Shown here: positions 1,197 through 53,879 of the stretch, piece after piece
How positions within the stretch are numbered: the first letter of the stretch is position 1
Layout of the letters: the number at the start of each line of letters is the position of its first letter
Assembly (NCBI RefSeq): GCF_001194135.2
Contig: NC_068993.1
Coordinates: 16,401,272-16,460,033, forward strand
DNA: 58,762 bases
Source of the DNA: Octopus bimaculoides
Lineage: Eukaryota
Direction: 5' to 3'
Translations under genes and position numbers: made by a program
The notes under the pieces: generated by a model
Seen by the model: the letters and a program-made list of their open reading frames with translations, nothing else
The model's database searches: none
Told to the model about the DNA's origin: nothing

Positions 1197-1594
1197 CAGT
1201 GGCTGTGTGGTAAGTAGCTTGCTAACCAACCACATGGTTCCGGGTTCTGTTCCACTGCGTGGCACCTTGGGCAAGTGTCTTCTACTATAGCCTCGGGCCG
1301 ACCAAAGCTTGTGAGTGGATTTGGTAGACGGAAACTGAAAGAAGCCTGTCGTATATATGTATATATAGATGTGTGTGTATTTGTGTGTCTGTGTTTGTCC
1401 CCCCCTAGCATTGCTTGACAATCGATGCTGGTGTGTTTATGTTCCCGTCACTTAGCGGTTCGGCAAAAGAGACCGATAGAATAAGTACTAGGCTTACAAA
1501 CAATAAGTCGCGGGGTCGATTTGCTCGACTAAAAGGCGGTGCTCCAGCATGGCCGCAGTCAAATGACTGAAACAAGTAAAAGGGTAAAAGAGTA
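1197..1594 (+). mobile_element. tRNA-headed SINE family A, full length
   Basis: A-box-like tggctgtgtggt, B-box-like ggttctgttcc, central (TA/TG)n and 3' tail gactgaaacaagtaaaag; near-identical copies at 20597, 24257, 51111 and 52938. Confidence 0.9.
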
Positions 1595-5803: not shown

Positions 5804-6106
5804 AAAGTAACTAGTAGCGACTTCTTTTGAAAATGGACAAAATTTGGCATCGCGGTGGTATCAAAGTACCCGTAGAAAAAGGGTTTAGTCCCAAAGGACA
5901 TTCATGCTACCATGGTTGCTTCATTGGGAGAATGATGCTCCAGCCTTAACAACAGTGCAGTGGTGGGCAGCTGAATTTAAGAGAGGAAGGAAAAGTCTTG
6001 AAGATTACCCAATGTCTGGTCATCTTGCAACTGCCACCACCGAGGAAAACATTGATCGTGTTCACCACATGGTGATGGATGACAGGCAATTGACTATAAA
6101 TAAAAT

Positions 6107-6752
6107 GGATCTATTTCAAAATGGGGGCACCAGTTTTCATTTATGTTTTATGTAGTGTTTTTGGTACCGAAAGACTTTCAAACTTCGTATACTTATCTAT
6201 TTTGTGTTATAGAACAGAAAAAATTTTTTGTATTCGAATTTATTTCATGTAAAAAATTGTCTTATTTCGATAATTTCTACTAATCACTGACGTCTATTCA
6301 GTTGAAAACAGTTAGCGCTGTAACGGTGTATATCGTATTAATCCCCTAACCCTAACTAGACTGTTAACCCTAACCCTAACCCTAAAACTAACCCTAACTC
6401 GAGAATCCGAACTCTAAAATTGTTACACACATAGATACGCACAGCGAAATTTATTATATAAATAATATGCGTATAAATTACGATTAAACCGGATGAAATA
6501 TGTCACAGGGAATAACATTTTTATGACCGCCCAGCAGTAACTCTATTGAGCTGAATAGACGTCAGTGATTGGTTGAAATTACAGAAATACGACAACTTTA
6601 ACATGGAATAACTTGCGATGTACGTTTTTTTGTTAAGAAGACTAAGAGTAAAAGATGTTTTATATGACACATTCTACCAGTGTCCCAAGTTTCAAAGTGT
6701 TTCGTTAGTGTTTCGTTAAGAAAATACTGGTGCCCCGTTTTGAAATAGATCC
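6107..6752. mobile_element. Long-TIR MITE (Merlin-like?) nested in mariner
   Basis: 8-bp TSD aataaaat (6099-6106, 6753-6760); TIR ggatctatttcaaaa(t/c)gggg; imperfect arms continue to a perfect 20-bp IR at 6282-6301/6551-6570; removing it restores the transposase frame (QLTINK-IANA). Confidence 0.85.
6344..6397. repeat. Interstitial (CCCTAA)n telomere-type repeat
   Basis: Six perfect CCCTAA units with two interruptions. Confidence 0.85.
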
Positions 6753-9170
6753 AATAAAATAGCCAATGCTATTAGCATGTCTTGTGAGAGTACTGAGAAT
6801 ATTCTGCGCAATGGAACATGGTATGACAAAGGCTTCTGCTTGGCTACCACGTCTTCTGACATCAAAAGCGCACCAGGTTGATCATACTGCAGGAAAATCT
6901 GATATTGTTTGAGACGGATGCAGTTGGTTTCCTTGAACACTTCCTAACAGAGGATAAGTGTTGCTTAATTACTTGGGCCAGAGAGACAATCCATGTAGTG
7001 GAAACATTCCTCCTCACCTGCTCCAAAGAAGGCCAAGATTGTTTCATCTGCAGGGAAGTTGATGGCTTCAGTTTTGGGGGATGGAAAAGGTATGGTGTTT
7101 ATTGACTGGGGCCACACAATCAGAGGAGAGTACTACGTAAACTTCCTGAGGCAGTTACGAAAGGCTATCAAGACCAAACGCTCAAGAAAACTGACAAAAT
7201 AGGTCTTATTTCATCAGGACAGTGCTCCTCAATCAAGTCGTTGGTTTCAATGGCTGCTGTGCATGACTGGCTTTGAATTGGTTGATCACCGTCCTTAATC
7301 TCCTGATTTGGCCCCCGCTGACTATTATCTCTTCCCCTACACGAAAAAAAAAAAAACTTGGCTAGGAAGCAGTATCACAGTGATGATGACGGCATATCTG
7401 CTGTTGACTTTTTTTTAGCAACAGGATGGAAGCTTCTTCACCGATGGAGATTGTTAAAAAATAAACTTCATTTGATCACATTCCATTGGTCAGCTTATGA
7501 ACTCTTCAGCCAACCCTCGTATACATACATAAAAATATATATTGTATATAAGTACTCAAACAGGCCTGTACATAGATACACAAATATACATGTACACATA
7601 AACACTGCATACACAAAAACAAGCGATTCGTGAAAACATAAAAAAGAGATAGATGTGTGTGTGTGTGTATGTATGTGGGTTTCATTATTCAGTATGTGGA
7701 TATGAAAGTCAGTGGGTGTACGTATATGTGCGCGCGCGTTTTACTTTTCAACTCGTACACGGACTTGAAAGGCAAATGTCGGCTTCATCAGGACATGAGA
7801 AAAAAAATTAAAGAAATATTGTCTATTTTTTTTTCCTTATTGTTTTTTTCTAGAAGTTTGTCCTAAACTCTCATACTTGTTTTCAGATNNNNNNNNNNNN
7901 NNNNNNNNNNNNNNNNNNNNNNNNNNNNNNNNNNNNNNNNNNNNNNNNNNNNNNNNNNNNNNNNNNNNNNNNNNNNNNNNNNNNNNNNNNNNNNNNNNNN
8001 NNNNNNNNNNNNNNNNNNNNNNNNNNNNNNNNNNNNNNNNNNNNNNNNNNNNNNNNNNNNNNNNNNNNNNNNNNNNNNNNNNNNNNNNNNNNNNNNNNNN
8101 NNNNNNNNNNNNNNNNNNNNNNNNNNNNNNNTTTAAATATCCGACATTCCAGTAAAATAGAAATTGTGCAAAGAACCGTAATTTCTTCGGGTCTGTAAGG
8201 AAGGACCGTGCGAACTCAAAAAGGAGAAATGGTGACGAATGGAAAAACAGAGGACTCCTTTTATTTAAACGTGTCACACGGTCGAACACAAACTAATATA
8301 TATCAAACATGATATACATGATATGTTATGCGACGATAACATAGATGACCAGTAATGAAAGACCACAACCGTATTAGATGAATAACAGAGATATTTATTA
8401 TGGCGTTAAAGATGTATGTCTGTGTGAGAGTGTGAATGCGACATATAAGAGCATAATCAAAGACAGTACGGTATTATCCATACAATTTCAAAATAAGGTG
8501 ATTAGAATCAAAATAAGCAACAAGGCTATCTAGAGGTAATGCAGTACGATCGTTTCCCGCAACTCCATTTAATTGAACAATGCAACCATTACATCAATTT
8601 AAATGCAGAGCAATCCTCAGCTGCACAAAGACAGAATTTAATTAAATTAAAACAGGTGGATACATTAGTATAATTTTGTCTAAAATCTCCAAGAAGTTAA
8701 GGAGATAGACAAAGAACATGCTGCCTTTCCTTCCACTTAGAAGCTACTAAGTTATCAGGAAGAAAGACTTGTTACAGATTTTGCATGTCACTTTTATATG
8801 TGATCTCAATCTAATTTATAGCTCGTTCAGCTTAAGACAGTCCAGATAGAGGAAACATCCATTGCTAAAACTTTATATATCACTTAAAATATCCAGAATA
8901 AATCAATTTGGATTGACAGAATCATTAGGGCATCGATCGTACCGTCAGCAGTTATAATGTTACAGCCTTTTAAGTGCCGAGTTCAAATCCCACAGATATC
9001 AAAATTTCCTTTCATCTTTCCAAGGTCGATACAAAGTCAAGCAATCTTTCCTCCAATATTTTGCTGTCGTTGAACGCAGATATTGGTTGTGTGCAATTTT
9101 TGTCTTTCTTTGCAATGTATGTACGATTTCGTGCCATTAACATCTTCGATTAAAAAATTTCGCTACCAGC

Positions 9171-11100: not shown

Positions 11101-11784
11101 TTTTGAAGAGTGCGAACCTAGTACTTATTCTATCAATCTCTTTTGCTGAACTAAGTTATGGAGATGTAAACACACCAACATCGGTTGTCAAGTGACGGTG
11201 AGGGGGATAGACAGACACACACACACACACACACACCCACACACACACACANNNNNNNNNNNNNNNNNNNNNNNNNNNNNNNNNNNNNNNNNNNNNNNNN
11301 NNNNNNNNNNNNNNNNNNNNNNNNNNNNNNNNNNNNNNNNNNNNNNNNNNNNNNNNNNNNNNNNNNNNNNNNNNNNNNNNNNNNNNNNNNNNNNNNNNNN
11401 NNNNNNNNNNNNNNNNNNNNNNNNNNNNNNNNNNNNNNNNNNNNNNNNNNNNNNNNNNNNNNNNNNNNNNNNNNNNNNNNNNNNNNNNNNNNNNNNNNNN
11501 NNNNNNNNNNNNNNNNNNNNNNNNNNNNNNNNNNNNNNNNNNNNNNNNNNNNNNNNNNNNNNNNNNNNNNNNNNNNNNNNNNNNNNNNNNNNNNNNNNNN
11601 NNNNNNNNNNNNNNNNNNNNNNNNNNNNNNNNNNNNNNNNNNNNNNNNNNNNNNNNNNNNNNNNNNNNNNNNNNNNNNNNNNNNNNNNNNNNNNNNNNNN
11701 GGTTGTCATTTTTCAGATTCGTAAATTGAAAAAGAATTTTTTTTTTGATAAATTTTCTTGTCAGTCATAAATAAATGATATAGT

Positions 11785-11818
<34 letters not shown>

Positions 11819-12194
11819 TTAATTTTTATATTTTTTCACTTATAATTCAGACATTATTTTGCAGCCTTACCAGGGTACTGTCTTCAAGGATTTTGTTTTT
11901 CCCTTTTATTTATTTTTTTTCTTTTAGCCAGCTATATTAACACTATTTCAGTCAGGTACTTATTTTATAAGTGTGAGGGTTAGCAGAAGGAAAGGCATCA
12001 AGCTGTAGAAACCCACCACAACAAATTCTGTCCAACCAATTGCAAGCATGGAAAAGTGGACATTGAAATGATGAGGTTATGATTTGTGGGGGATTTGGCT
12101 ACTGTTTTTGGTAGGTCAAGCTGTTACAGAATCTCCCTGATTAGCTGTTTTTCTCTTTCAAACCTGTAGGCTCAACATACCTGCTATGTTATTA

Positions 12195-12400
12195 CCAGTC
12201 TGTGTTTGTCCCCCCAACATCGCTTGACAACCGATGGTGGTGTGTTTATGTCTCCATAACTTAGTGGTTCGGCAAAAGAGTCTGATAGAACAAGTACTAT
12301 GCTTACAAAGAATAAGTCCTGGGGTCAATTTTGCTCGACTAAAGGCGGTGCTCCAGCATGGCTGCAGTCAAATGACTGAAACAAGTAAAAGAGTAAAGAG
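12195..12400 (+). mobile_element. SINE family A 3' half
   Basis: Matches 1385-1594 closely. Confidence 0.85.
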
Positions 12401-12447
12401 AGTAATATATGTTATTTATAATGGATGGATAGGTGTCCTTGTTTGTT

Positions 12448-12494
12448 ATCACAATGTTTCGGCTGATGTACTCTCCAGCCTTCATCAGCTGTTC
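12448..12494 (-). ncRNA. Minimal type-I hammerhead ribozyme motif (degenerate copy)
   Basis: Minus strand reads aacag-CTGATGA-A-GGCTG-gagagtacat-CAGCC-GAAA-CATT-gtgat. Confidence 0.65.
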
Positions 12495-12632
12495 TGGTGG
12501 AATTTCAAACCCAACCCTTTGGTATGTTGCTGATGTTATTTTTCTGTTGATATTATTTTTCAAGGCCCTGCCTAGGGTTGAATTTAGAATCCTCATAAGT
12601 CAAATAAAGGGTTGGGTTCGAAATTCCACCAG

Positions 12633-12678
12633 AACACCTGATAAAGGCTGGAGAGTACATCAGCTGAAATGTTGTGAT
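12633..12678 (+). ncRNA. Minimal type-I hammerhead ribozyme motif (degenerate copy)
   Basis: aacac-CTGATAA-A-GGCTG-gagagtacat-CAGCT-GAAA-TGTT-gtgat. Confidence 0.55.
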
Positions 12679-12868
12679 AACAACAAACAAGATGAGGACA
12701 CCTATCCATCCATTATAAATAACATACATAATTTCTCATCTCAAAAATATAGAAAGAGTAATGTATTTTAATGAAAATATGGTAACAGAGTTAAAGTGTA
12801 AAATAGTGTCAAGTTGCATTCCTTTATGTCAAAGATTATTGAGCTATTTTATAAATGTTGATCATTAA

Positions 12869-14623: not shown

Positions 14624-14878
14624 ATTATCATCATCTTCGTTTAACGTCTGTTTTCCATGCTGGCATGGGTTGGACGGTTTGACTGGAGACTGGCAAGCCA
14701 GGAGGCCGCACCAGGCTCCAATCTGATCTGGCAATGTTTTTACAGCTGGATACCTTTCCTAACGCCAACTACTCTGAGAGTGTCGTGGGTGCTTTTTTAT
14801 GTGCCACTGGCACGAGAGCCAGTCAGGTGGAACTTGCATCGGCCACATTCAGACGGTGCTTTTTACATACCACCGGCA
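14624..14878 (-). mobile_element. RTE 3'-UTR-type retroposon
   Basis: (GAT)n tail, gttaggaaagg..tccagctgtaaaa block and 5' repeats of gtggcacataaaaa. Confidence 0.8.
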
Positions 14879-14880
14879 GA

Positions 14881-15048
14881 AGACAGCTGCAGGAGAAATA
14901 CCTAACCAAAGATAAACCTCTGTACCTGGCTTTTGTTGACATGGAGAAAGCCTTTAACATGGTCCCCTGATCCCTTATCTGGTGGTCAATGTGGAAACTA
15001 GGGATAGATGAGTGGTTAGTGAGAGCTGTACGAGCCATGTACAGGGAA
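14881..15048 (+). pseudogene. RTE LINE reverse transcriptase fragment
   Basis: RQLQEKYLTKDKPLYLAFVDMEKAFNMVP*SLIWWSMWKLGIDEWLVRAVRAMYRE. Confidence 0.88.
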
Positions 15049-20596: not shown

Positions 20597-21082
20597 CTCT
20601 TTCTTTTACTCTTTTACTTGTTTCAGTCATTTGACTGCGGCCATGCTGGAGCACCACCTTTATAGTCTAGCAAATCGACCCCAGAGCTTATTCTTTGTAA
20701 GCTTAGTACTTATTCTATCGGTCTCTTTTGCTGAACTGCTAAGTTACGGGGACGTAAACACACCAGCATCGGTNNNNNNNNNNNNNNNNNNNNNNNNNNN
20801 NNNNNNNNNNNNNNNNNNNNNNNNNNNNNNNNNNNNNNNNNNNNNNNNNNNNNNNNNNNNNNNNNNNNNNNNGGGGGGGGGGGGCAAACAGACACACAAA
20901 CACACATATACATATATACGACGGGCTTCTTCCAGTTTCCATCTACCAAATCCATTCACAAGGCTTTGGTCGGCCCGAGGCTATAGTAGAAGACACTTGC
21001 CCAAGGTGCCACGCAGTGGGACTGAACCCGGGACCATGTGGTTGGTAAGCAAGCTACTTACCACACAGCCACTCCTGCGCCT
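20597..21082 (-). mobile_element. SINE family A, full length (spans N-gap)
   Basis: Reverse complement of the 1197-1594 copy. Confidence 0.9.
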
Positions 21083-22005: not shown

Positions 22006-22845
22006 GTGCACGTGTGTATGTCTGTATTTTAAAGTAATGAAATTCCTGTATGTATTTCAATAGCAGCATGCTTTCTAGCATTCTACTAATTGCATGGATA
22101 ATCTCAGTTAATTGGAGTTTTTCAATTCCCTATATTACATTATATGATTCTAGTGTATATGTAAGTATATTATTTGGTTGAAACTTGCTTGTGTGTGTTT
22201 GCATGGTTGTATGTTTTTCATTTTTGCACGCAAGTGTGTAGCAAAATTCATCTACATACAATGAAGTATGTGCGTGTGCAAGTATGTTACCACTGACAAC
22301 CATTTCACTGGGCAACAGTATTGATTTCTAACATAGGCACAAGGCTTTAAATATCTAGAAAAAAATGTAGTTGATTGTAGAACTTGATTGGTACTTATTT
22401 TATTGAACTGGAAGAATGAAAGGCAAAGTCCACCTTGGTGAAACACAAATCGATGCAGTTACATGTAACAAAGCATTTTCTCTGTCATTCTATCAATTTT
22501 GCTTGTCCACTACCCTAGAGATACCCCAGTATTTACAGAGGAAGCCTTCAGTTTATACCCTTTTCAGGTCATACCCTAGCAGAAGGGTAGTTTTCTCTGC
22601 AATATATTAAGAAAATACAGGGTGGTCACAGCTGAAATTCTTTTCATCATGGACTTTATCAGTCAGGGCTGACCTGTATCCATCAGTGACTAATGTAAGG
22701 TCATCATCAGTGGCAGTCGTATTGTGTCTCTGTGTTTACCTTTTACTTGTTTCAGTCGTTATAGATTACGGCCATGCTAAGGTACCATGTTGAAGAATTG
22801 TTAGTCAAATGAATTGACTCTAGTATTTATTTCTTTTAAAGCCTG

Positions 22846-24256: not shown

Positions 24257-24663
24257 CTTTTATCTTTCATCTTATACTTATTTCAGTTATTAGACTGCGG
24301 CTATTGTGGGGCACCGTTTCGAAGAATTTTAGTCAGATGAATCGGCCCCCAGTACTGATTTTCTTTAAAGCCTGGTACTTATTCTATCAGTCTCTTTTGC
24401 TGAACCATTAGGTTAAGGAGATGTGAACACACTAACACTGGTTGTCAAGCAGTGATGGGAGACAAAAAAGGCACAAAGACACACACACACATATATATGT
24501 ACAATGGACTTCTTTCAGTTTCCATCTACCAAATCCACTCTCAAGGCTTTGGTTAGCTTGAGGCTGTAGTAAAAGACACTTGCCCAAGGTGCCACACATT
24601 GGGACTAAACCTGGAACTATGTGGTTGGAAAGCAAACTTCTTACCACACAGCCGTTCCTAGCC
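24257..24663 (-). mobile_element. SINE family A, full length, CpG-decayed
   Basis: Collinear with the reverse complement of 1197-1594. Confidence 0.88.
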
Positions 24664-25936: not shown

Positions 25937-27366
25937 CTTCATGTCTGTATCACTTGACAACTGGTGTTGGTGTGTTTATGTCCCCTGTAACTTAGTTGTT
26001 CAGCAAAAGTGACCGATAAAATCAGTACTAGGCTTTAAAAGATTAAAGCCTGGGGTCAGTTTGTTTGACTAAAAACCCTTCAAGGTAGTACTCCAGCATG
26101 ACCACAGTGAAATGACTGAAACAAGTGAAAGATAAAAGATACTTGGAAGAGCGTTAACATAGATGAAATATAATTTGGATTTGTGCCAGGGCAGGAACCA
26201 CTGATGTTGTCTTTGTAGTAAGACCATGCTTGAAGAAGTAAACTAATGTACTTAGCATTTGTTGATCTGAAGAATTAAGTTAACATACCTAACACTTGTT
26301 GATCTGAAGAAGGCTTTTGACAAAGTATCATGATCTGTTGTTTGGCTTGGCAGGTGCTAAGAAAACTGTTGTTGAATGGCTGGTAGGAGCTGTGCAAGCC
26401 ATGTATAGAGCTGAAATTAGCAAGGTGTGAGTTAGCAAAGAGTTCAGTCACAAATTTAGTATGCAGGTAGGTGTCTGCCAGAGCTTGGTTCCCAGCTCCT
26501 GTCTCTTTATTATAGTTTCCTCAAGGCATAACAGAGATTGTTCATGAGAACTCTTGCATACCAATGAATAATGGTGTAATCTGTTGGAGAATTACAGAAT
26601 ATATTCCATACATGGGAACAAGCTTCGGATTGAAATGCCTTAAAGTCAATCTAGCAAAGATGAATTTCTTGTCAGCAGGAGAGAAGACAGGATTCTACTG
26701 CCACCTGGGAACTGGTCATGCTAAATATGCAGATTATGACTACAAGTGCTCAAGAATTATAATGGTATCACAGGTATGCTGACAGAAGGCTCACTTCTTA
26801 TCTGGCAGATGCACAAGTGTAGTTAACAATAAGAGCACCTGTAAAATTCTTTCAGATGTTCAGAAAGCTCTATAGAGAATGTTTAGGGGGGTACCAGCTT
26901 CCTATGTAGTTTCCATTCCTATCAACCAAGATTATATGATGTTTTTGTGCAAAGCATGATGTTTAATGAAGGCAAAACACAGGCGTTGAATTAGAAAATG
27001 TGCAAAGGCATGGGAGAAATGAAGTGAGCAAATTGTGTAATGTTAATATGCATGAATAATAGAACATGAACGAGGGGAGAAAAATATTGGGGACATAGAT
27101 GCTGTGTGTAAAAGAGAAGCTTGCACTGGTATGGACATATGATGCATATGGAAGATGACATTAGGAAAATGATAAGCCATATAATCCAAGTGGAAAGAGC
27201 CTGCAGAAGAGGAAGACATGGGAAGAAGTGGTGAAAGCTATTCTAAGGATACTAAATTATAAGGGACAACAAAGGAGTGCAGCTATTAGTAAGATGCTAC
27301 AATGGAGAAAACCTGTCCAGTCGATGCAAGCATAGGAAAACAGTTGAAAAGTGAGGGTGATGATTT
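25150..27366 (+). mobile_element. RTE LINE fossil (ORF2 3' part plus tail) interrupted by SINEs
   Basis: VTSEMLKIFFEVGY../VNQVVQGG (~25200), IDEI*FGFVPG and MYLAFVDLKK (~26160-26275), later degenerate RT/C-terminal similarity, and a (GAT) tail at ~27360. Confidence 0.75.
25425..26140 (+). mobile_element. SINE A with a family E-like SINE (25659-25850) nested in its central microsatellite
   Basis: A 5' half 25425-25585, E-like head and body, (TG)n, A 3' half ~25935-26140. Confidence 0.8.
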
Positions 27367-30084: not shown

Positions 30085-30463
30085 GTCCTCAGTCCATTTC
30101 ACTCCCCCCACACACCTTCTTGTCACATCTTCAGCATATCCCTCCTTTCCTCTTTTTTCACTTGAGGTAGCCATGTTTCTCCTCTGATTCAAGACACTTT
30201 TTTTCTTTCCCTCAGTACTACTCCCTACCTCAGTTGAGGGCGTTTTGTCCTGCAAGTTACTTGGTGATCTCACTGCTGTTGGTGCCACATAAAAAGCACC
30301 CAGTACACTCTGTAAAATGGTTGGCATTAAGAAGGGCATTCAGCTGTAGAAACCATGCCAAAGCAGGCAACAGGCAATGATGTAACCTTCTGACTTGCCA
30401 ATTACTGTCCAACCATCCAACTCACTCCCCTGGAAAACAAATGTTAAACAATGATGATAATGA
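30085..30463 (+). mobile_element. RTE 3'-UTR-type retroposon (CT-rich 5' variant)
   Basis: aaaagcacccagtacactctg..aagggcattcagctgtagaaac..(GAT); related copy at 55360-55672. Confidence 0.75.
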
Positions 30464-32534: not shown

Positions 32535-33130
32535 GTCTGGTCAATAACTATCCAGACTGTTGCCATAGTAATGAAGCTAAAGCATGCAGAGTGGAGCCAC
32601 TTGGCACAAATTGACCTTGAACTCTGCTGTGCATTCACACTAAGTTTTAACATTTTAGCTCGTATCTGCTGTTTATAGCAGTGCTTGGAAGGAAGGTGTT
32701 TAGCGTGTGATTGTCGCATTAACCATGACAGAGAAAGCTGAGCAGAGAATCTGCATCAAATTTTGCTAAGAGCTTGGCGATATCTGCTCAGAGGCCTATG
32801 CAAAGTTTTCAAAAGGTTTTCATCTTTCTCGATACAATCAAGATCTTGTGCAACTGAAACCCGAGTGTCTTTTTGGTCAGCTAAAAGCAGTTTTGGCACA
32901 AATTTGGCACACATGCGTCTCGTACCCAAATCTTCAATGATGATGGACTGAAATGAACCATACCTAGTCTGCACATCCTCTGATAACTCACAGATGGTTA
33001 GTCGATGATTTCCTCTCACAGCTGCACACACACCTGAAATGTTTTTCTCAGTTCTGCTGATTGTGGGTCTCCCAGAACATTTGTCAATATCGACATTTTT
33101 TCGGCCATCTTTAATATGGTACCAGCATGA
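32522..33130. mobile_element. Rearranged mariner fossil with internal inversion
   Basis: Plus strand MTEKAEQRICIKFC*ELGDICSEAYAK from ~32725; minus strand DGRKNVDIDKCSGRPTISRTEKNI..RLTICEL..CAKFVPKLL (33110 to 32810). Confidence 0.85.
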
Positions 33131-33189
33131 GTGTGCTGGGTGCTTTTGATGTGGCACTGGAATGAGAGGAAGATTAGACAGCTGTTTCT

Positions 33190-33421
33190 TATTTTTTTTA
33201 TTGCCCACAAGGAGTTAAACATAGAGGGGACAAACAAGGACAGACAAAGGGATTAAGTTGATTAGATCGACCCCAGTGCGTAACTGGTACTTAATTTATC
33301 GACCCCAAAAGGATGAAAGGCAAAGTCAACCTTGGCAGAATTTGAACTCAGAACGTAATGGTAGACGAAATACCGCTAAGCATTTCGCCCAGCGTGCTAA
33401 CGTTTCTGCCAGCTCGCCACC
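33190..33421 (-). mobile_element. SINE family B, full length with TSD
   Basis: aga(c/t)agctgtttct at 33176-33189 and 33422-33435. Confidence 0.92.
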
Positions 33422-34554: not shown

Positions 34555-34860
34555 AATACAATCAAAATCAAGCTATTCATTGCAACTGTTAAATCAGTGC
34601 TATTATATAGCAGAGAGACATGGATGCTGACAAAGAAATTATTAAATAGGCTAAATGGATGCTATACAAGGATGCTATGAATGGCCCTAAAGTGAAATGG
34701 CAGAAACATATGACAGATGAATGCCTTTATGGAGATCTACTGAAAGTTAGCAAGAATATCAGGCAAAGACAGCTGCAGCTATTTGGTTGTTGCATGTGCT
34801 ACACTGAACTGGAAGCCACTTCATAGTGATGTAAGAAGAGGAAAATGTCATCACACTTAC
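34555..34860 (+). pseudogene. RTE-group LINE ORF2 C-terminal fragment
   Basis: IKIKLFIATVKSVLLYSRETWMLTKKLLNRLNGCYTRML*MAL / KWQKHMTDECLYGDLLKVSKNIRQRQLQLFG. Confidence 0.8.
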
Positions 34861-34875
34861 ATTGACAACCATATT

Positions 34876-35045
34876 AAAAGCACCTAGCACACCCTGTAAA
34901 GTGGTTGACATAAGGAAGGGCATCCAGTCATAGAAACCAAGCCAAATTAGACTGGAACCTGGTGCAGCTCTTCAGCTTGCCAACTCTGGTCAAACTGTCC
35001 AAGGCATGCCAGCACGGAAGATGGACATTAAATGATGATGATGAT
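34876..35045 (+). mobile_element. RTE 3'-UTR-type retroposon
   Basis: aggaagggcatccag..catgccagcacgg..(GAT)n. Confidence 0.8.
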
Positions 35046-35339
35046 GTCTTTAAAAGGAAAAAACACATTATGGATGCTAGCATGGCCGTGTAAAAACATT
35101 TTGCTTTGCACTCACACTATTCTGGGTTTGATCCTATCCTGTGGCAGCTTTGCCAAGTGCCTTGTCTCAACACAGGCCCTGTTGGTGAGGTGTTTGGGGA
35201 ATGGGAAATGTGCAGAGGCCTCTAAGACATTCTCTGTCTGATGGAGGATGATTTAGTCTGGTTTAACACTATCGCCTCACCTTTCAGTGCCTATAAGAGG
35301 GTCCATTTTGATACAAGCATTCAGGTTAAGTCTCTAGTC

Positions 35340-49945: not shown

Positions 49946-50039
49946 TCCATCACGATTTCGATTTCACTTGCCTCATGTTTTTATAATTCTTTAACCACCT
50001 GATATATTTTCTTTAAAATGTTTAATTTCATGAGGTCTA

Positions 50040-50956: not shown

Positions 50957-51592
50957 CTTTGGCATTTGGCATTTAAACCGGCCATATCTGGCCATAGTAT
51001 CCTGTCTGTTTTATGTTCAAACCAGCTTTATCTGGTCCCTCACACCTACCCTACAATATCATTCTGAAAATAAACAATTGCATCATTGAAATCTCAAAGC
51101 TATGATATACCCTTTTTTTTTTTACTCTTTTGTTTCAGTCATTTAACTGTGGCTATGCTGGAGCACTGCCTTTTAGTCGAGCAAATTGACCCCAGGACTT
51201 ATTCTTTGTAAGCCTAGTACTTATTTTATCAGTCTCTTTTGCCGAACTGCTGAGTTACAGGGATGTAAACACACCAGCATCAGTTGTCAAGCGATGTTGG
51301 GGGGGAGGGGGCAAACATAGACACACAAACATATACACACACATACATATATATATGTATACAACAAGCTTCTTTCAGTTTCGGTCTACCAAATCCACTC
51401 ACAAGGCTTTGGTTGGTCCGAGGCTATAGTAGAAGACACTTGCCTAAGGTGCCACGCAATGAGACTGAACCCGGACCCATGTGTTTCGTAAGCAAGCTAC
51501 TTACCACACAGCCACTCCTACACCTATATAATTCATGATTAATTCATGCAATGTGAATAAATAGGCATTAAAGCAATCTGAATGCTAAAATG
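50957..51592 (+). mobile_element. piggyBac-type MITE split by a SINE A
   Basis: TTAA at 50953-50956 and 51593-51596; halves collinear with the 12869 copy. Confidence 0.8.
51111..51525 (-). mobile_element. SINE family A, full length
   Basis: Reverse complement of 1197-1594. Confidence 0.9.
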
Positions 51593-52937: not shown

Positions 52938-53111
52938 TCTTTCATCTTTTACTTGTTTCAGCCATTTGACTAAGTCCATGCTGGACTACTACTTTGAAGG
53001 GTTTTAGTTGACTTATTTTTTTTAAAAACCTAGCACCTATTCTATCAGTCACTTTTGCCAAACTGTTAAGTTATGGGGACATAAGCACACCAATACNNNN
53101 NNNNNNNNNNN

Positions 53112-53303: not shown

Positions 53304-53879
53304 ATTAGTGTAATCTTTTGATATACCGAAAGACAGGATGATCCCAGCAGGAATATATCTAATCTTTGGCATGTTAGGGTCTGATTAAACCTGGCACTAA
53401 AACAACAACATTGTGTACATCCTGTTAGTGTACCAACACCTTTTACATAGCTTATAGATCAGCCATTCAGTGAGCCTTTACTTGATTCCACTACTTGCTA
53501 GAAATAGCAGTCAAATCTATCTCACACTAAACTTAAGAAAGGATATTTACATTGGTCATTGTGGTCTTGGATATAAAAGAAAGATGAGATGGTCATGGCT
53601 GGAATATTTTTTATCATTGGTCTTCTTAATGAAGAACTGACTTGAACGAAAAGTTACATCTAGTTCATGAAAATCTTCAGATAAAAGAAGAATATTCTTT
53701 AAGTTAGATATTAATTTACCTTTTACTTGTTTCAGTCATCGGACTGTGGCCATGCTGGGACACTATCTTGAAAGGTTTCAAGCTAACAAAGCTGTACCTA
53801 CATAATCACTTGACCTGCTAGAATGAACTACCAAATTTCTCTCCAGTTAGATCTCGTCATTATCGAAAAATTTTCAAAT

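What the first reader, a model, noticed from the sequence alone, without database searches (positions are those of the whole stretch)
12399..12762. Inverted pair of minimal hammerhead ribozymes in a Penelope-like non-autonomous element
Seen: two ~115-bp inverted arms each contain stem I - CUGAU(G/A)A - A - GGCUG/10-nt loop/CAGC(C/U) - GAAA - (CAUU or UGUU) - GUG. Each copy has different lesions. CAUU and UGUU are the two opposite-strand CpG-deamination products of CGUU, so the consensus is CAC CUGAUGA A GGCUG..CAGCC GAAA CG UU/GUG. This has a complete core, a GUU cleavage triplet and a palindromic AACGUU in place of helix III. Established: Penelope-like element repeats carry minimal type-I hammerheads lacking helix III and proposed to act as dimers; inverted terminal repeats are common in PLEs; an extra A after A9 is tolerated in a viroid hammerhead. 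Inference: a ribozyme-bearing, retrozyme-like family in this genome. The spacer may hold a decayed tRNA B-box, implying a tRNA-head/PLE-tail chimera. Candidate TSD agagtaat. No RT or GIY-YIG ORF is in the window, and these two copies are probably inactive.
Basis: partly seen in the sequence, partly recalled or inferred. Interest (0 to 1): 0.85.

Follow-up and report, generated by a model that had tools for sequence, protein, structure and literature searches.

The report
Dead Penelope-like retrotransposon end with hammerheads
This 364-base stretch of an octopus-type genome is the decayed stump of a Penelope-like retrotransposon insertion, two head-to-head copies of the element's 3' end that each carry its usual minimal hammerhead ribozyme motif; it is a real but ordinary and already well-described kind of feature.

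Summary
Window 12405-12520 (- strand) and 12606-12729 (+ strand) are inverted copies. Each carries a hammerhead-like motif: CAC/G-CUGAU(G/A)A-A-GGCUGG/8-nt loop/UCAGC(C/U)-GAAA-(CA/UG)UU-GUG. This is not chance. A covariance model built only from hammerheads next to RT-encoding Penelope-like elements (PLEs) of lamprey, spider, weevil, damselfly and anole ranks the two arms first in the window (27 bits, E about 2e-5; next hit 13 bits). The layout also matches those PLE loci: head-to-head inverted copies, the cleavage site 56 nt from the arm end (50-56 nt in three insect PLEs), an extra 25-nt tail at one end only, and a short target duplication. The host is an octopod genome, where PLEs are known to be abundant. 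The most economical reading is one heavily 5'-truncated PLE insertion, dead on arrival and since eroded mainly by CpG decay. Whether its RNA came from an autonomous PLE or a short non-autonomous relative is open, because no other copy could be retrieved. The tRNA B-box idea is not supported. The retrozyme-like family is untested. Minimal hammerheads in PLE repeats were described in 2014. Interest is low.

The parts
12399..12406 (.). Left copy of the candidate target-site duplication (agagtaat). It is also the last bases of the upstream SINE's (AGTAAAGAG)n-like tail.
   Evidence: The alternative register AAAGAGTAA (12388-12396 = 12753-12761) is equally possible because the tail is repetitive.
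12405..12520 (-). Left arm: a 3'-terminal PLE segment read on the - strand. It abuts the TSD directly with no tail, like the main copy in the control PLE loci.
12445..12496 (-). Minimal hammerhead motif, left copy. Helix I 5' 12491-12489 (CAG, the position-2.1 pair is broken). Core CUGAUGA 12488-12482. Extra A 12481. Stem II and loop 12480-12461. GAAA 12460-12457. CAUU 12456-12453, with the predicted cleavage site after 12453. GUG 12452-12450.
   Evidence: descriptor; model R1, 27.2 bits, E 2.2e-5
12521..12605 (.). Unique 85-nt spacer between the arms. It is probably the extra 5' sequence of the longer of the two truncated copies (inference). It has no coding similarity, no tRNA and no B-box.
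12606..12729 (+). Right arm: the same 3'-terminal PLE segment read on the + strand.
12630..12681 (+). Minimal hammerhead motif, right copy. Helix I CAC 12635-12637. Core CUGAUAA 12638-12644 (G8 to A). Extra A 12645. Stem II GGCUGG 12646-12651. Loop 12652-12659. UCAGCU 12660-12665. GAAA 12666-12669. UGUU 12670-12673, with the predicted cleavage site after 12673. GUG 12674-12676.
   Evidence: (model R1, 26.8 bits, E 2.7e-5)
12730..12754 (+). A 25-nt extension present at this end only (aatttctcatctcaaaaatatagaa), interpreted as the PLE 'tail'.
   Evidence: the arm alignment ends here on the left copy; control PLE loci have one-sided tails of 29-33 nt between the TSD and the inverted copy. Literature: PMC8557442, PMC11167929.
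12755..12762 (.). Right copy of the candidate target-site duplication (agagtaat).
12181..12404 (+). Context only: the 3' part of an abundant octopod SINE. The PLE fragment landed at the end of its microsatellite-like tail.
   Evidence: 9 other copies in the window; 83% identical copy in the Octopus sinensis locus L006

Best explanation
This is a relic of one Penelope-like element (PLE) retrotransposition event in an octopod genome. The PLE machinery cut the target at the end of a SINE tail. It then copied only about the last 120-200 nt of its RNA from both cut strands. The result is two head-to-head, 5'-truncated copies of the element's 3' end. One copy started at the more distal reverse-transcription start site and therefore carries a 25-nt 'tail'. 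A short target duplication flanks the whole insertion. Like PLE repeats generally, that 3' segment contains a minimal type-I hammerhead ribozyme: helix I of 3 bp, CUGAUGA, one extra nucleotide, a 6-bp helix II, GAAA, and a palindromic CG in place of helix III, with cleavage after GUU. In the parent element such hammerheads are thought to act as dimers on tandem-repeat transcripts. At this locus the motif does nothing. There is no coding part, each transcript would hold only one sense copy locked in a hairpin of about 115 bp, and both copies have since picked up core or stem lesions, mostly by CpG decay. Shown here: the motif, its match to PLE hammerheads, and the matching layout. Inferred: two-strand priming as the origin of the inverted pair, and the ancestral CG. 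Unresolved: whether the template RNA came from an autonomous PLE or from a short non-autonomous derivative.
For: (1) Model R1 was built only from hammerheads beside RT-encoding PLE ORFs of lamprey, spider, weevil and damselfly, plus the published anole Poseidon_Ac. It ranks the two arms first and second in the window at 27.2 and 26.8 bits, E about 2e-5. The next hit scores 12.9 bits. PLE hammerheads held out of the model score 30-35 bits, and unrelated loci score 15 bits or less.
(2) The anatomy is the same nucleotide by nucleotide. Lamprey: CAC CUGAUGA A GGCCGC..GUGGCC GAAA CGUC GUG. Reconstructed window motif: CAC CUGAUGA A GGCUGG..UCAGCC GAAA CGUU GUG.
(3) Four of six control PLE loci have an inverted hammerhead-bearing copy upstream of the ORF.
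(4) The distance from the cleavage site to the arm end is 52, 56 and 50 nt in three insect PLEs and 56 nt here. Those three controls also show a TSD (12-15 bp) and a one-sided 29-33-nt tail next to the inverted copy, the same layout as here.
(5) The literature describes these same features. [quoted passage not shown] PMC8557442 reports an inverted 5'-truncated copy, a one-sided tail and a bias for microsatellite targets. [quoted passage not shown]
(6) The host is an octopod, and PLEs are abundant there (PMC13282606, PMC8967140).
(7) The chance expectation for the motif is 0.0002-0.003 per window.
Against: No other copy of this family and no full-length parent PLE could be retrieved, so there is no family consensus and no covariation within the family. 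The ancestral states of G8 and C2.1 are chosen, not proven; each is supported by only one arm. The tail is 25 nt, shorter than the 29-40 nt seen in the controls and the literature, and it has no obvious similarity to the insect tails. The TSD is only 8-9 bp exact, against 12-15 bp in the controls, and it sits in a repetitive SINE tail, so it could partly be residual tail sequence. Rfam hammerhead models give no hit, although they also miss the intact control PLE hammerheads. All training hammerheads come from the Penelope/Poseidon clade and were picked with a descriptor that required stem II. Helix I was not required.
Confidence: 0.85

Rival explanations
1. This is a copy of a dedicated short non-autonomous, hammerhead-bearing family (retrozyme-like or SINE-like) mobilised in trans by PLE enzymes, rather than a truncated autonomous PLE.
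For: The whole insertion is only about 350 bp and has no coding remnant. Non-LTR retrozymes are reported to derive from PLE pLTRs (bioRxiv 10.64898/2026.07.22.740005). Non-autonomous PLE derivatives are known (PMC8557442).
Against: There is no tandem arrangement, which defines non-LTR retrozymes, and no second copy in 58.7 kb. Extreme 5' truncation together with an inverted twin is the normal fate of autonomous PLE insertions. There is no tRNA-like head.
Confidence: 0.2
2. This is a MITE or foldback DNA transposon whose long terminal inverted repeats happen to contain a hammerhead-like string.
For: The 115-bp arms and short spacer fold into a near-perfect hairpin. Sub-threshold Rfam hits go to hairpin-type miRNA families: MIR4208 scores 56.6 bits against a gathering score of 140.
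Against: No TSD flanks both arms directly; the right arm is separated from the repeat by 25 nt. The arms score E about 2e-5 against a model trained only on PLE hammerheads. The chance expectation for the motif is at most 0.003 per window. The distance from the hammerhead to the terminus matches PLEs.
Confidence: 0.04
3. This is a hairpin-RNA gene (a miRNA, siRNA or other structured non-coding RNA) under selection for its fold.
For: The fold is strong: -196 kcal/mol, z = -21.
Against: The structure is fully explained by the inverted duplication. The arm differences are mostly CpG decay with no compensatory changes. All Rfam hits are far below their gathering scores.
Confidence: 0.02

Closest known systems
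Minimal hammerhead ribozymes (min-HHR) of metazoan Penelope-like elements (Cervera & De la Pena 2014, PMC4209133)
   Same: Type-I topology with no helix III. One unpaired nucleotide between A9 and G10.1. A G10.1-C11.1 pair. A longish helix II (6 bp) and a short helix I (3 bp). Palindromic 15.2/16.2 (CG, inferred). Occurrence as two motifs on opposite strands a few hundred bp apart. Scored by a model of such motifs at E about 2e-5.
   Different: Both copies here are mutated (G8A in one; broken helix I and 16.2 in the other). The family consensus is unknown. No activity data exist.
Canonical PLE insertion architecture: 5'-truncated copy plus adjacent inverted 5'-truncated copy, one-sided 30-40-bp tail, TSD (Arkhipova 2006; Craig et al. 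2021, PMC8557442; PMC11167929)
   Same: Head-to-head inverted copies with 3' ends facing outward. An extension at one end only. A flanking short duplication. A target in a microsatellite-like tract. The hammerhead about 50-56 nt from the copy's 3' end, as in the Tenebrio, Sitophilus and Ischnura PLE loci.
   Different: Both copies are truncated to under about 200 nt, so no ORF or pLTR remains. The tail is 25 nt rather than 29-40 nt. The TSD is 8-9 bp exact rather than 12-15 bp.
Non-LTR retrozymes of animals (Cervera & de la Pena 2020, PMC7229834; bioRxiv 10.64898/2026.07.22.740005)
   Same: Type-I hammerhead of PLE ancestry in a non-coding repeat.
   Different: Retrozymes are head-to-tail tandem repeats that give circular RNAs. 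This locus is a single inverted pair with no tandem unit.

Membership tests
PLE-type minimal hammerhead (min-HHR) | Conserved catalytic core CUGANGA ... GAAA | tested here: met
   The left copy is perfect. The right copy has G8 to A. One copy is intact and the other has one lesion.
PLE-type minimal hammerhead (min-HHR) | [quoted passage not shown] | tested here: met
   There is an extra A in both copies. G-C is present in the left copy; the right copy has G-U through CpG decay. The same feature is present in all 8 distinct control PLE hammerheads.
PLE-type minimal hammerhead (min-HHR) | Helix II of 6-8 bp, and helix III absent and replaced by palindromic 15.2/16.2 | tested here: inconclusive
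   Helix II is 6 bp in both copies. The present 15.2/16.2 states are C/A and U/G. Palindromic CG is inferred from the CA/TG decay pattern and from CGU(C/U) in all controls.
PLE-type minimal hammerhead (min-HHR) | Short helix I closing the motif | tested here: met
   CAC/GUG, 3 bp, in the right copy; the left copy has one mismatch. The six control sequences used to build the model have 3 bp, 100% paired with covariation, although the descriptor did not require it.
PLE-type minimal hammerhead (min-HHR) | Quantitative match to a profile of bona fide members | tested here: met
   Model R1 gives 27.2 and 26.8 bits, E about 2e-5. These are the top two hits of the window, and the next scores 12.9 bits. 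Held-out true members score 30-35 bits.
PLE-type minimal hammerhead (min-HHR) | Family-level conservation and covariation within the genome; self-cleavage as a dimer | not testable with these tools
   No other copy was retrievable. There is no wet-lab assay.
Penelope-like element insertion | Linked RT plus GIY-YIG ORF, or demonstrable identity of the terminus with such an element | tested here: not met
   There is no PLE coding similarity in the window. The parent element was not found because the host genome is not searchable here. The locus is therefore filed as a PLE-derived fragment on structural grounds, not as a full member.
Penelope-like element insertion | Inverted 5'-truncated twin, one-sided tail, TSD | tested here: met
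   Caveats: the tail is 25 nt and the TSD is 8-9 bp in a repetitive context.
Non-LTR retrozyme | Head-to-tail tandem repeats, each unit with a type-I hammerhead | tested here: not met
   TRF finds no such array, and the two motifs are on opposite strands.
tRNA-derived SINE head | tRNA-like fold or A and B boxes | tested here: not met
   ARAGORN finds none. Rfam gives no tRNA hit at E<=10. There is no B-box match with up to 1 mismatch in 12399-12762.
Rfam hammerhead families | Score at or above the gathering threshold | tested here: not met
   There is no hit even at E<=10. The same models also miss the intact PLE hammerheads of the control loci, so this result is uninformative.

The most novel reading that the evidence does not exclude
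The element may be one copy of an abundant, discrete, non-autonomous hammerhead-bearing PLE derivative in octopods. Its tandem copies would give ribozyme-processed circular RNAs (cephalopod retrozymes). Its frequent inverted twins would add to the unusually large pool of long dsRNA hairpins that feeds ADAR hyper-editing in octopus (PMC5625713 reports exceptional dsRNA potential in Octopus bimaculoides and heavy editing of Penelope elements in lizard).
Probability: 0.1. Interest if true: 0.4.

Novelty: new member of a known kind. Interest (0 to 1): 0.15.

Why it matters
It matters little beyond annotation. The result shows that the PLE-type minimal hammerhead and the characteristic PLE insertion scar (inverted twin, one-sided tail) can still be recognised in an octopod genome in a fragment of about 350 bp with no coding sequence. 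It also shows that Rfam's hammerhead models miss this whole class, including intact copies next to PLE ORFs. A small dedicated covariance model such as R1 would therefore annotate many 'unknown' short repeats in PLE-rich genomes. The locus itself is a dead relic.

Tried and rejected
1. Rfam at gathering threshold and at E<=10 gave no hammerhead hit. I rejected this as evidence against the motif, because intact control PLE hammerheads are also missed.
2. Looking for further copies failed everywhere:
- blastn within the window found none.
- A protein-word search with the 112-aa ORF spanning the element found nothing.
- A 19-mer scan of the metagenome collection gave five chance matches in high-GC prokaryotic contigs.
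- A 27-mer scan of prokaryotic genomes and both viral-contig scans (the 27-mer and an earlier 21-mer) found nothing.
3. Trying to reach octopus PLEs through a Poseidon_Ac protein search returned only vertebrate, arthropod and metagenome PLEs among the 120 hits listed. I used these as positive controls instead.
4. Looking up a window ORF in the contig index found no record.
5. tRNA and B-box checks were negative.
6. A search for coding remnants in the spacer and across the window was negative.
7. The MITE reading was rejected because no TSD flanks both arms directly, and because of the model score.
8. The idea that the two hammerheads pair as a functional dimer was rejected. They are on opposite strands, and the transcript folds into one long hairpin.

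Full report
**What is there.** Window 12399-12762 contains two inverted copies of a segment of about 120 nt: 12405-12520 and 12606-12729, separated by 85 nt.
- The copies differ at 9 of 116 aligned sites plus one 8-nt indel in an ACAA-rich tract.
- Eight of the nine differences are transitions.
- Six are CpG-decay events, including two CA/TG doublets.
- The window as a whole has a CpG observed/expected ratio of 0.33.
- As RNA the stretch folds into a single hairpin of about 115 bp (-196 kcal/mol, z = -21).

**The hammerhead motif.** The - strand of the left arm reads CAG-CUGAUGA-A-GGCUGG-agaguaca-UCAGCC-GAAA-CAUU-GUG. The + strand of the right arm reads CAC-CUGAUAA-A-GGCUGG-agaguaca-UCAGCU-GAAA-UGUU-GUG.
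- A descriptor requiring a perfect CUGANGA, 0-1 extra nucleotide, a G-C-closed stem of at least 4 bp, and GAAA finds only the left arm in the whole window.
- In 475 Mb of first-order Markov sequence with the window's composition, the expectation per window is 0.003, 0.001 and 0.0002 for stems of at least 4, 5 and 6 bp.
- Three of the five differences inside the motif resolve objectively to the ribozyme-compatible state by CpG logic: C11.1, C15.2 and G16.2.
- The other two, G8 and C2.1, are each supported by one arm only.

**Host and surroundings.** The window is a gapped draft with 2106 N, 35% G+C, rich in microsatellites and transposon debris.
- Immediately upstream (12181-12404) lies the 3' part of a SINE. 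It has nine other copies in the window and ends in an (AGTAAAGAG)n-like tail.
- The same SINE and other repeats occur at 80-89% identity in an Octopus sinensis chromosome locus.
- A Helitron fragment in the window has cephalopod proteins among its best named relatives.
- The source is therefore an octopod. PLEs are a recognised, abundant and partly recently active repeat class there (PMC13282606, PMC8967140).

**Comparison with real Penelope-like elements.** The literature describes metazoan PLE hammerheads by these same traits.
- PMC8557442: PLE insertions are 5'-truncated, often have an adjacent inverted truncated copy, carry a 30-40-bp tail at one end only, and prefer microsatellite targets.
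- PMC11167929: the anole element PAc cleaves and extends both target strands, and the tail corresponds to the sequence between two reverse-transcription start sites.

To turn this resemblance into a test, I fetched loci encoding PLE RT proteins. I scanned them with a looser form of the descriptor: stem II of at least 3-4 bp with any closing pair, 0-2 extra nucleotides, loops up to 30 nt, and in one scan a U3/A8 core variant.
- Lamprey, spider, weevil, damselfly and a metagenomic eukaryote contig all carry the motif just 3' of the ORF: [3-bp helix I]-CUGANGA-N-[6-8-bp helix II]-GAAA-CGU(C/U)-[helix I].
- So does the published Poseidon_Ac consensus.
- The lamprey motif is CAC-CUGAUGA-A-GGCCGC...GUGGCC-GAAA-CGUC-GUG. 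Outside helix II and its loop it differs from the reconstructed window motif only at position 17 (C versus U).
- Helix I was not part of the descriptor, yet it is 100% paired with covariation across the six sequences used for the model.

**Model test.** A covariance model (R1) was built from six of these sequences, excluding anything from the window.

| Sequences scored with R1 | Score |
|---|---|
| Window, left arm | 27.2 bits, E = 2.2e-5 |
| Window, right arm | 26.8 bits, E = 2.7e-5 |
| Window, next best hit | 12.9 bits |
| Held-out true PLE hammerheads (Tenebrio, JGI contig) | 30-35 bits |
| Prokaryotic contigs and 21 kb of O. sinensis | 15 bits or less |

Rfam's hammerhead models miss both the window motif and the intact control motifs, so that negative result carries no weight.

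**Layout.** In four of the six control loci an inverted hammerhead-bearing copy lies upstream of the ORF.

| Locus | Cleavage site to outer end of arm | TSD | Tail |
|---|---|---|---|
| Tenebrio (L008) | 52 nt | 12-15 bp | 29-33 nt, one-sided |
| Sitophilus (L011) | 56 nt | 12-15 bp | 29-33 nt, one-sided |
| Ischnura (L012) | 50 nt | 12-15 bp | 29-33 nt, one-sided |
| Window | 56 nt | 8-9 bp exact | 25 nt, one-sided |

- In the three insect loci the TSD abuts the main copy directly, while the tail separates the other TSD copy from the inverted copy.
- The window shows the same plan in mirror image. agagtaat (12399-12406) abuts the left arm. The right arm is followed by 25 extra nt (12730-12754) and then agagtaat (12755-12762).
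- The TSD is shorter than in the controls and lies in the SINE's repetitive tail. Its exact extent is therefore uncertain; AAAGAGTAA in another register is equally possible.

**Interpretation.** The simplest account is one PLE retrotransposition event that copied only about the last 120-200 nt of the template from both cut strands. This produced a head-to-head pair of 3' ends with no coding capacity.
- No PLE protein similarity exists in the element or anywhere in the window.
- The two hammerheads lie on opposite strands, so they cannot form the dimer proposed for PLE ribozymes. Any transcript would fold into the long hairpin.
- The copies were non-functional from the start and have decayed neutrally.
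- The arm-to-arm Jukes-Cantor distance is 0.08, about 0.04 per arm. On the calibration quoted for O. vulgaris repeats this suggests an age in the order of 10-20 million years. This is a rough inference.

**What is not supported.**
- The spacer holds no tRNA, B-box or Rfam tRNA signal.
- There is no tandem unit, so the retrozyme label does not apply to this locus.
- A dedicated non-autonomous family cannot be excluded. No other copy could be retrieved from the collections available, and the host assembly itself could not be searched.

**Verdict.** It is an ordinary instance of a class described in 2014, in a genome known to be rich in PLEs. I score interest at 0.15 and rate it a new member of a known kind.

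Noticed in passing
window 1387-1594(+), 11119-11207(-), 12181-12404(+), 20602-20773(-), 22735-22778(-), 24347-24466(-), 25949-26139(+), 51130-51304(-), 52938-52985(-), 53715-53758(-): Ten copies or fragments of one SINE that ends in an (AGTAAAGAG)n-like tail. In several copies an internal (TG/TA)n microsatellite separates a head from this 3' part. An 83% identical copy lies in Octopus sinensis locus L006 15685-15858.
   Followed up: partly
window 5889-7199(+) and 32759-33214(-): Decayed mariner-type transposase fragments. ORF 6999-7199 hits Pfam Transposase_1 at E = 2.7e-14. The others look like mariner N-terminal regions by eye but have no Pfam hit.
   Followed up: partly
window 47674-48451(-): A Helitron N-terminal fragment in two frames (one frameshift). 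It is 45-48% identical to Octopus sinensis and Acanthosepion pharaonis Helitron-like proteins.
   Followed up: partly
window 14683-14967(+), with related translations at about 30085-30339(-), 34762-35116(-), 39529-40074(+), 43359-43790(-), 48581-48843(-), 49668-49991(+): A repeat family whose translation contains LQLDA(F/L)PNANHSE. At 14683-14967 it runs into an RT-like motif (LAFVDMEKAFNMVP), so it is probably a LINE. Window 14627-14763 and 49612-49863 match L006 of O. sinensis at 81-87%.
   Followed up: no
whole window: The CpG observed/expected ratio is 0.33 against a GpC ratio of 1.06, which indicates heavy CpG depletion. The 21-kb O. sinensis locus L006 has 0.63. There are 2106 N in several assembly gaps, mostly next to microsatellites.
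   Followed up: no
L008, L009, L010, L011, L012 (control PLE loci): Rfam 15 hammerhead models give no hit at E<=10 on intact minimal hammerheads that sit directly 3' of PLE ORFs, whereas a 6-sequence custom model finds them all. This class appears to be a gap in Rfam coverage.
   Followed up: partly
L008 1722-1754, L011 2190-2218, L012 2466-2497, and the L009 left flank before 612: The one-sided PLE tails of three insect loci, and the lamprey flank, share a motif resembling g(c/t)tttc.cggcc..t.g. This suggests the tail sequence is conserved across distant Penelope/Poseidon elements. The window's tail does not obviously share it.
   Followed up: no
window 12482-12488 with 12461-12467 (left arm, - strand): The core CUGAUG is complementary to CAUCAG in loop 2 and the 3' strand of stem II. 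This gives an alternative 7-bp hairpin that competes with the hammerhead fold in the minimum-free-energy structure of the left copy.
   Followed up: no
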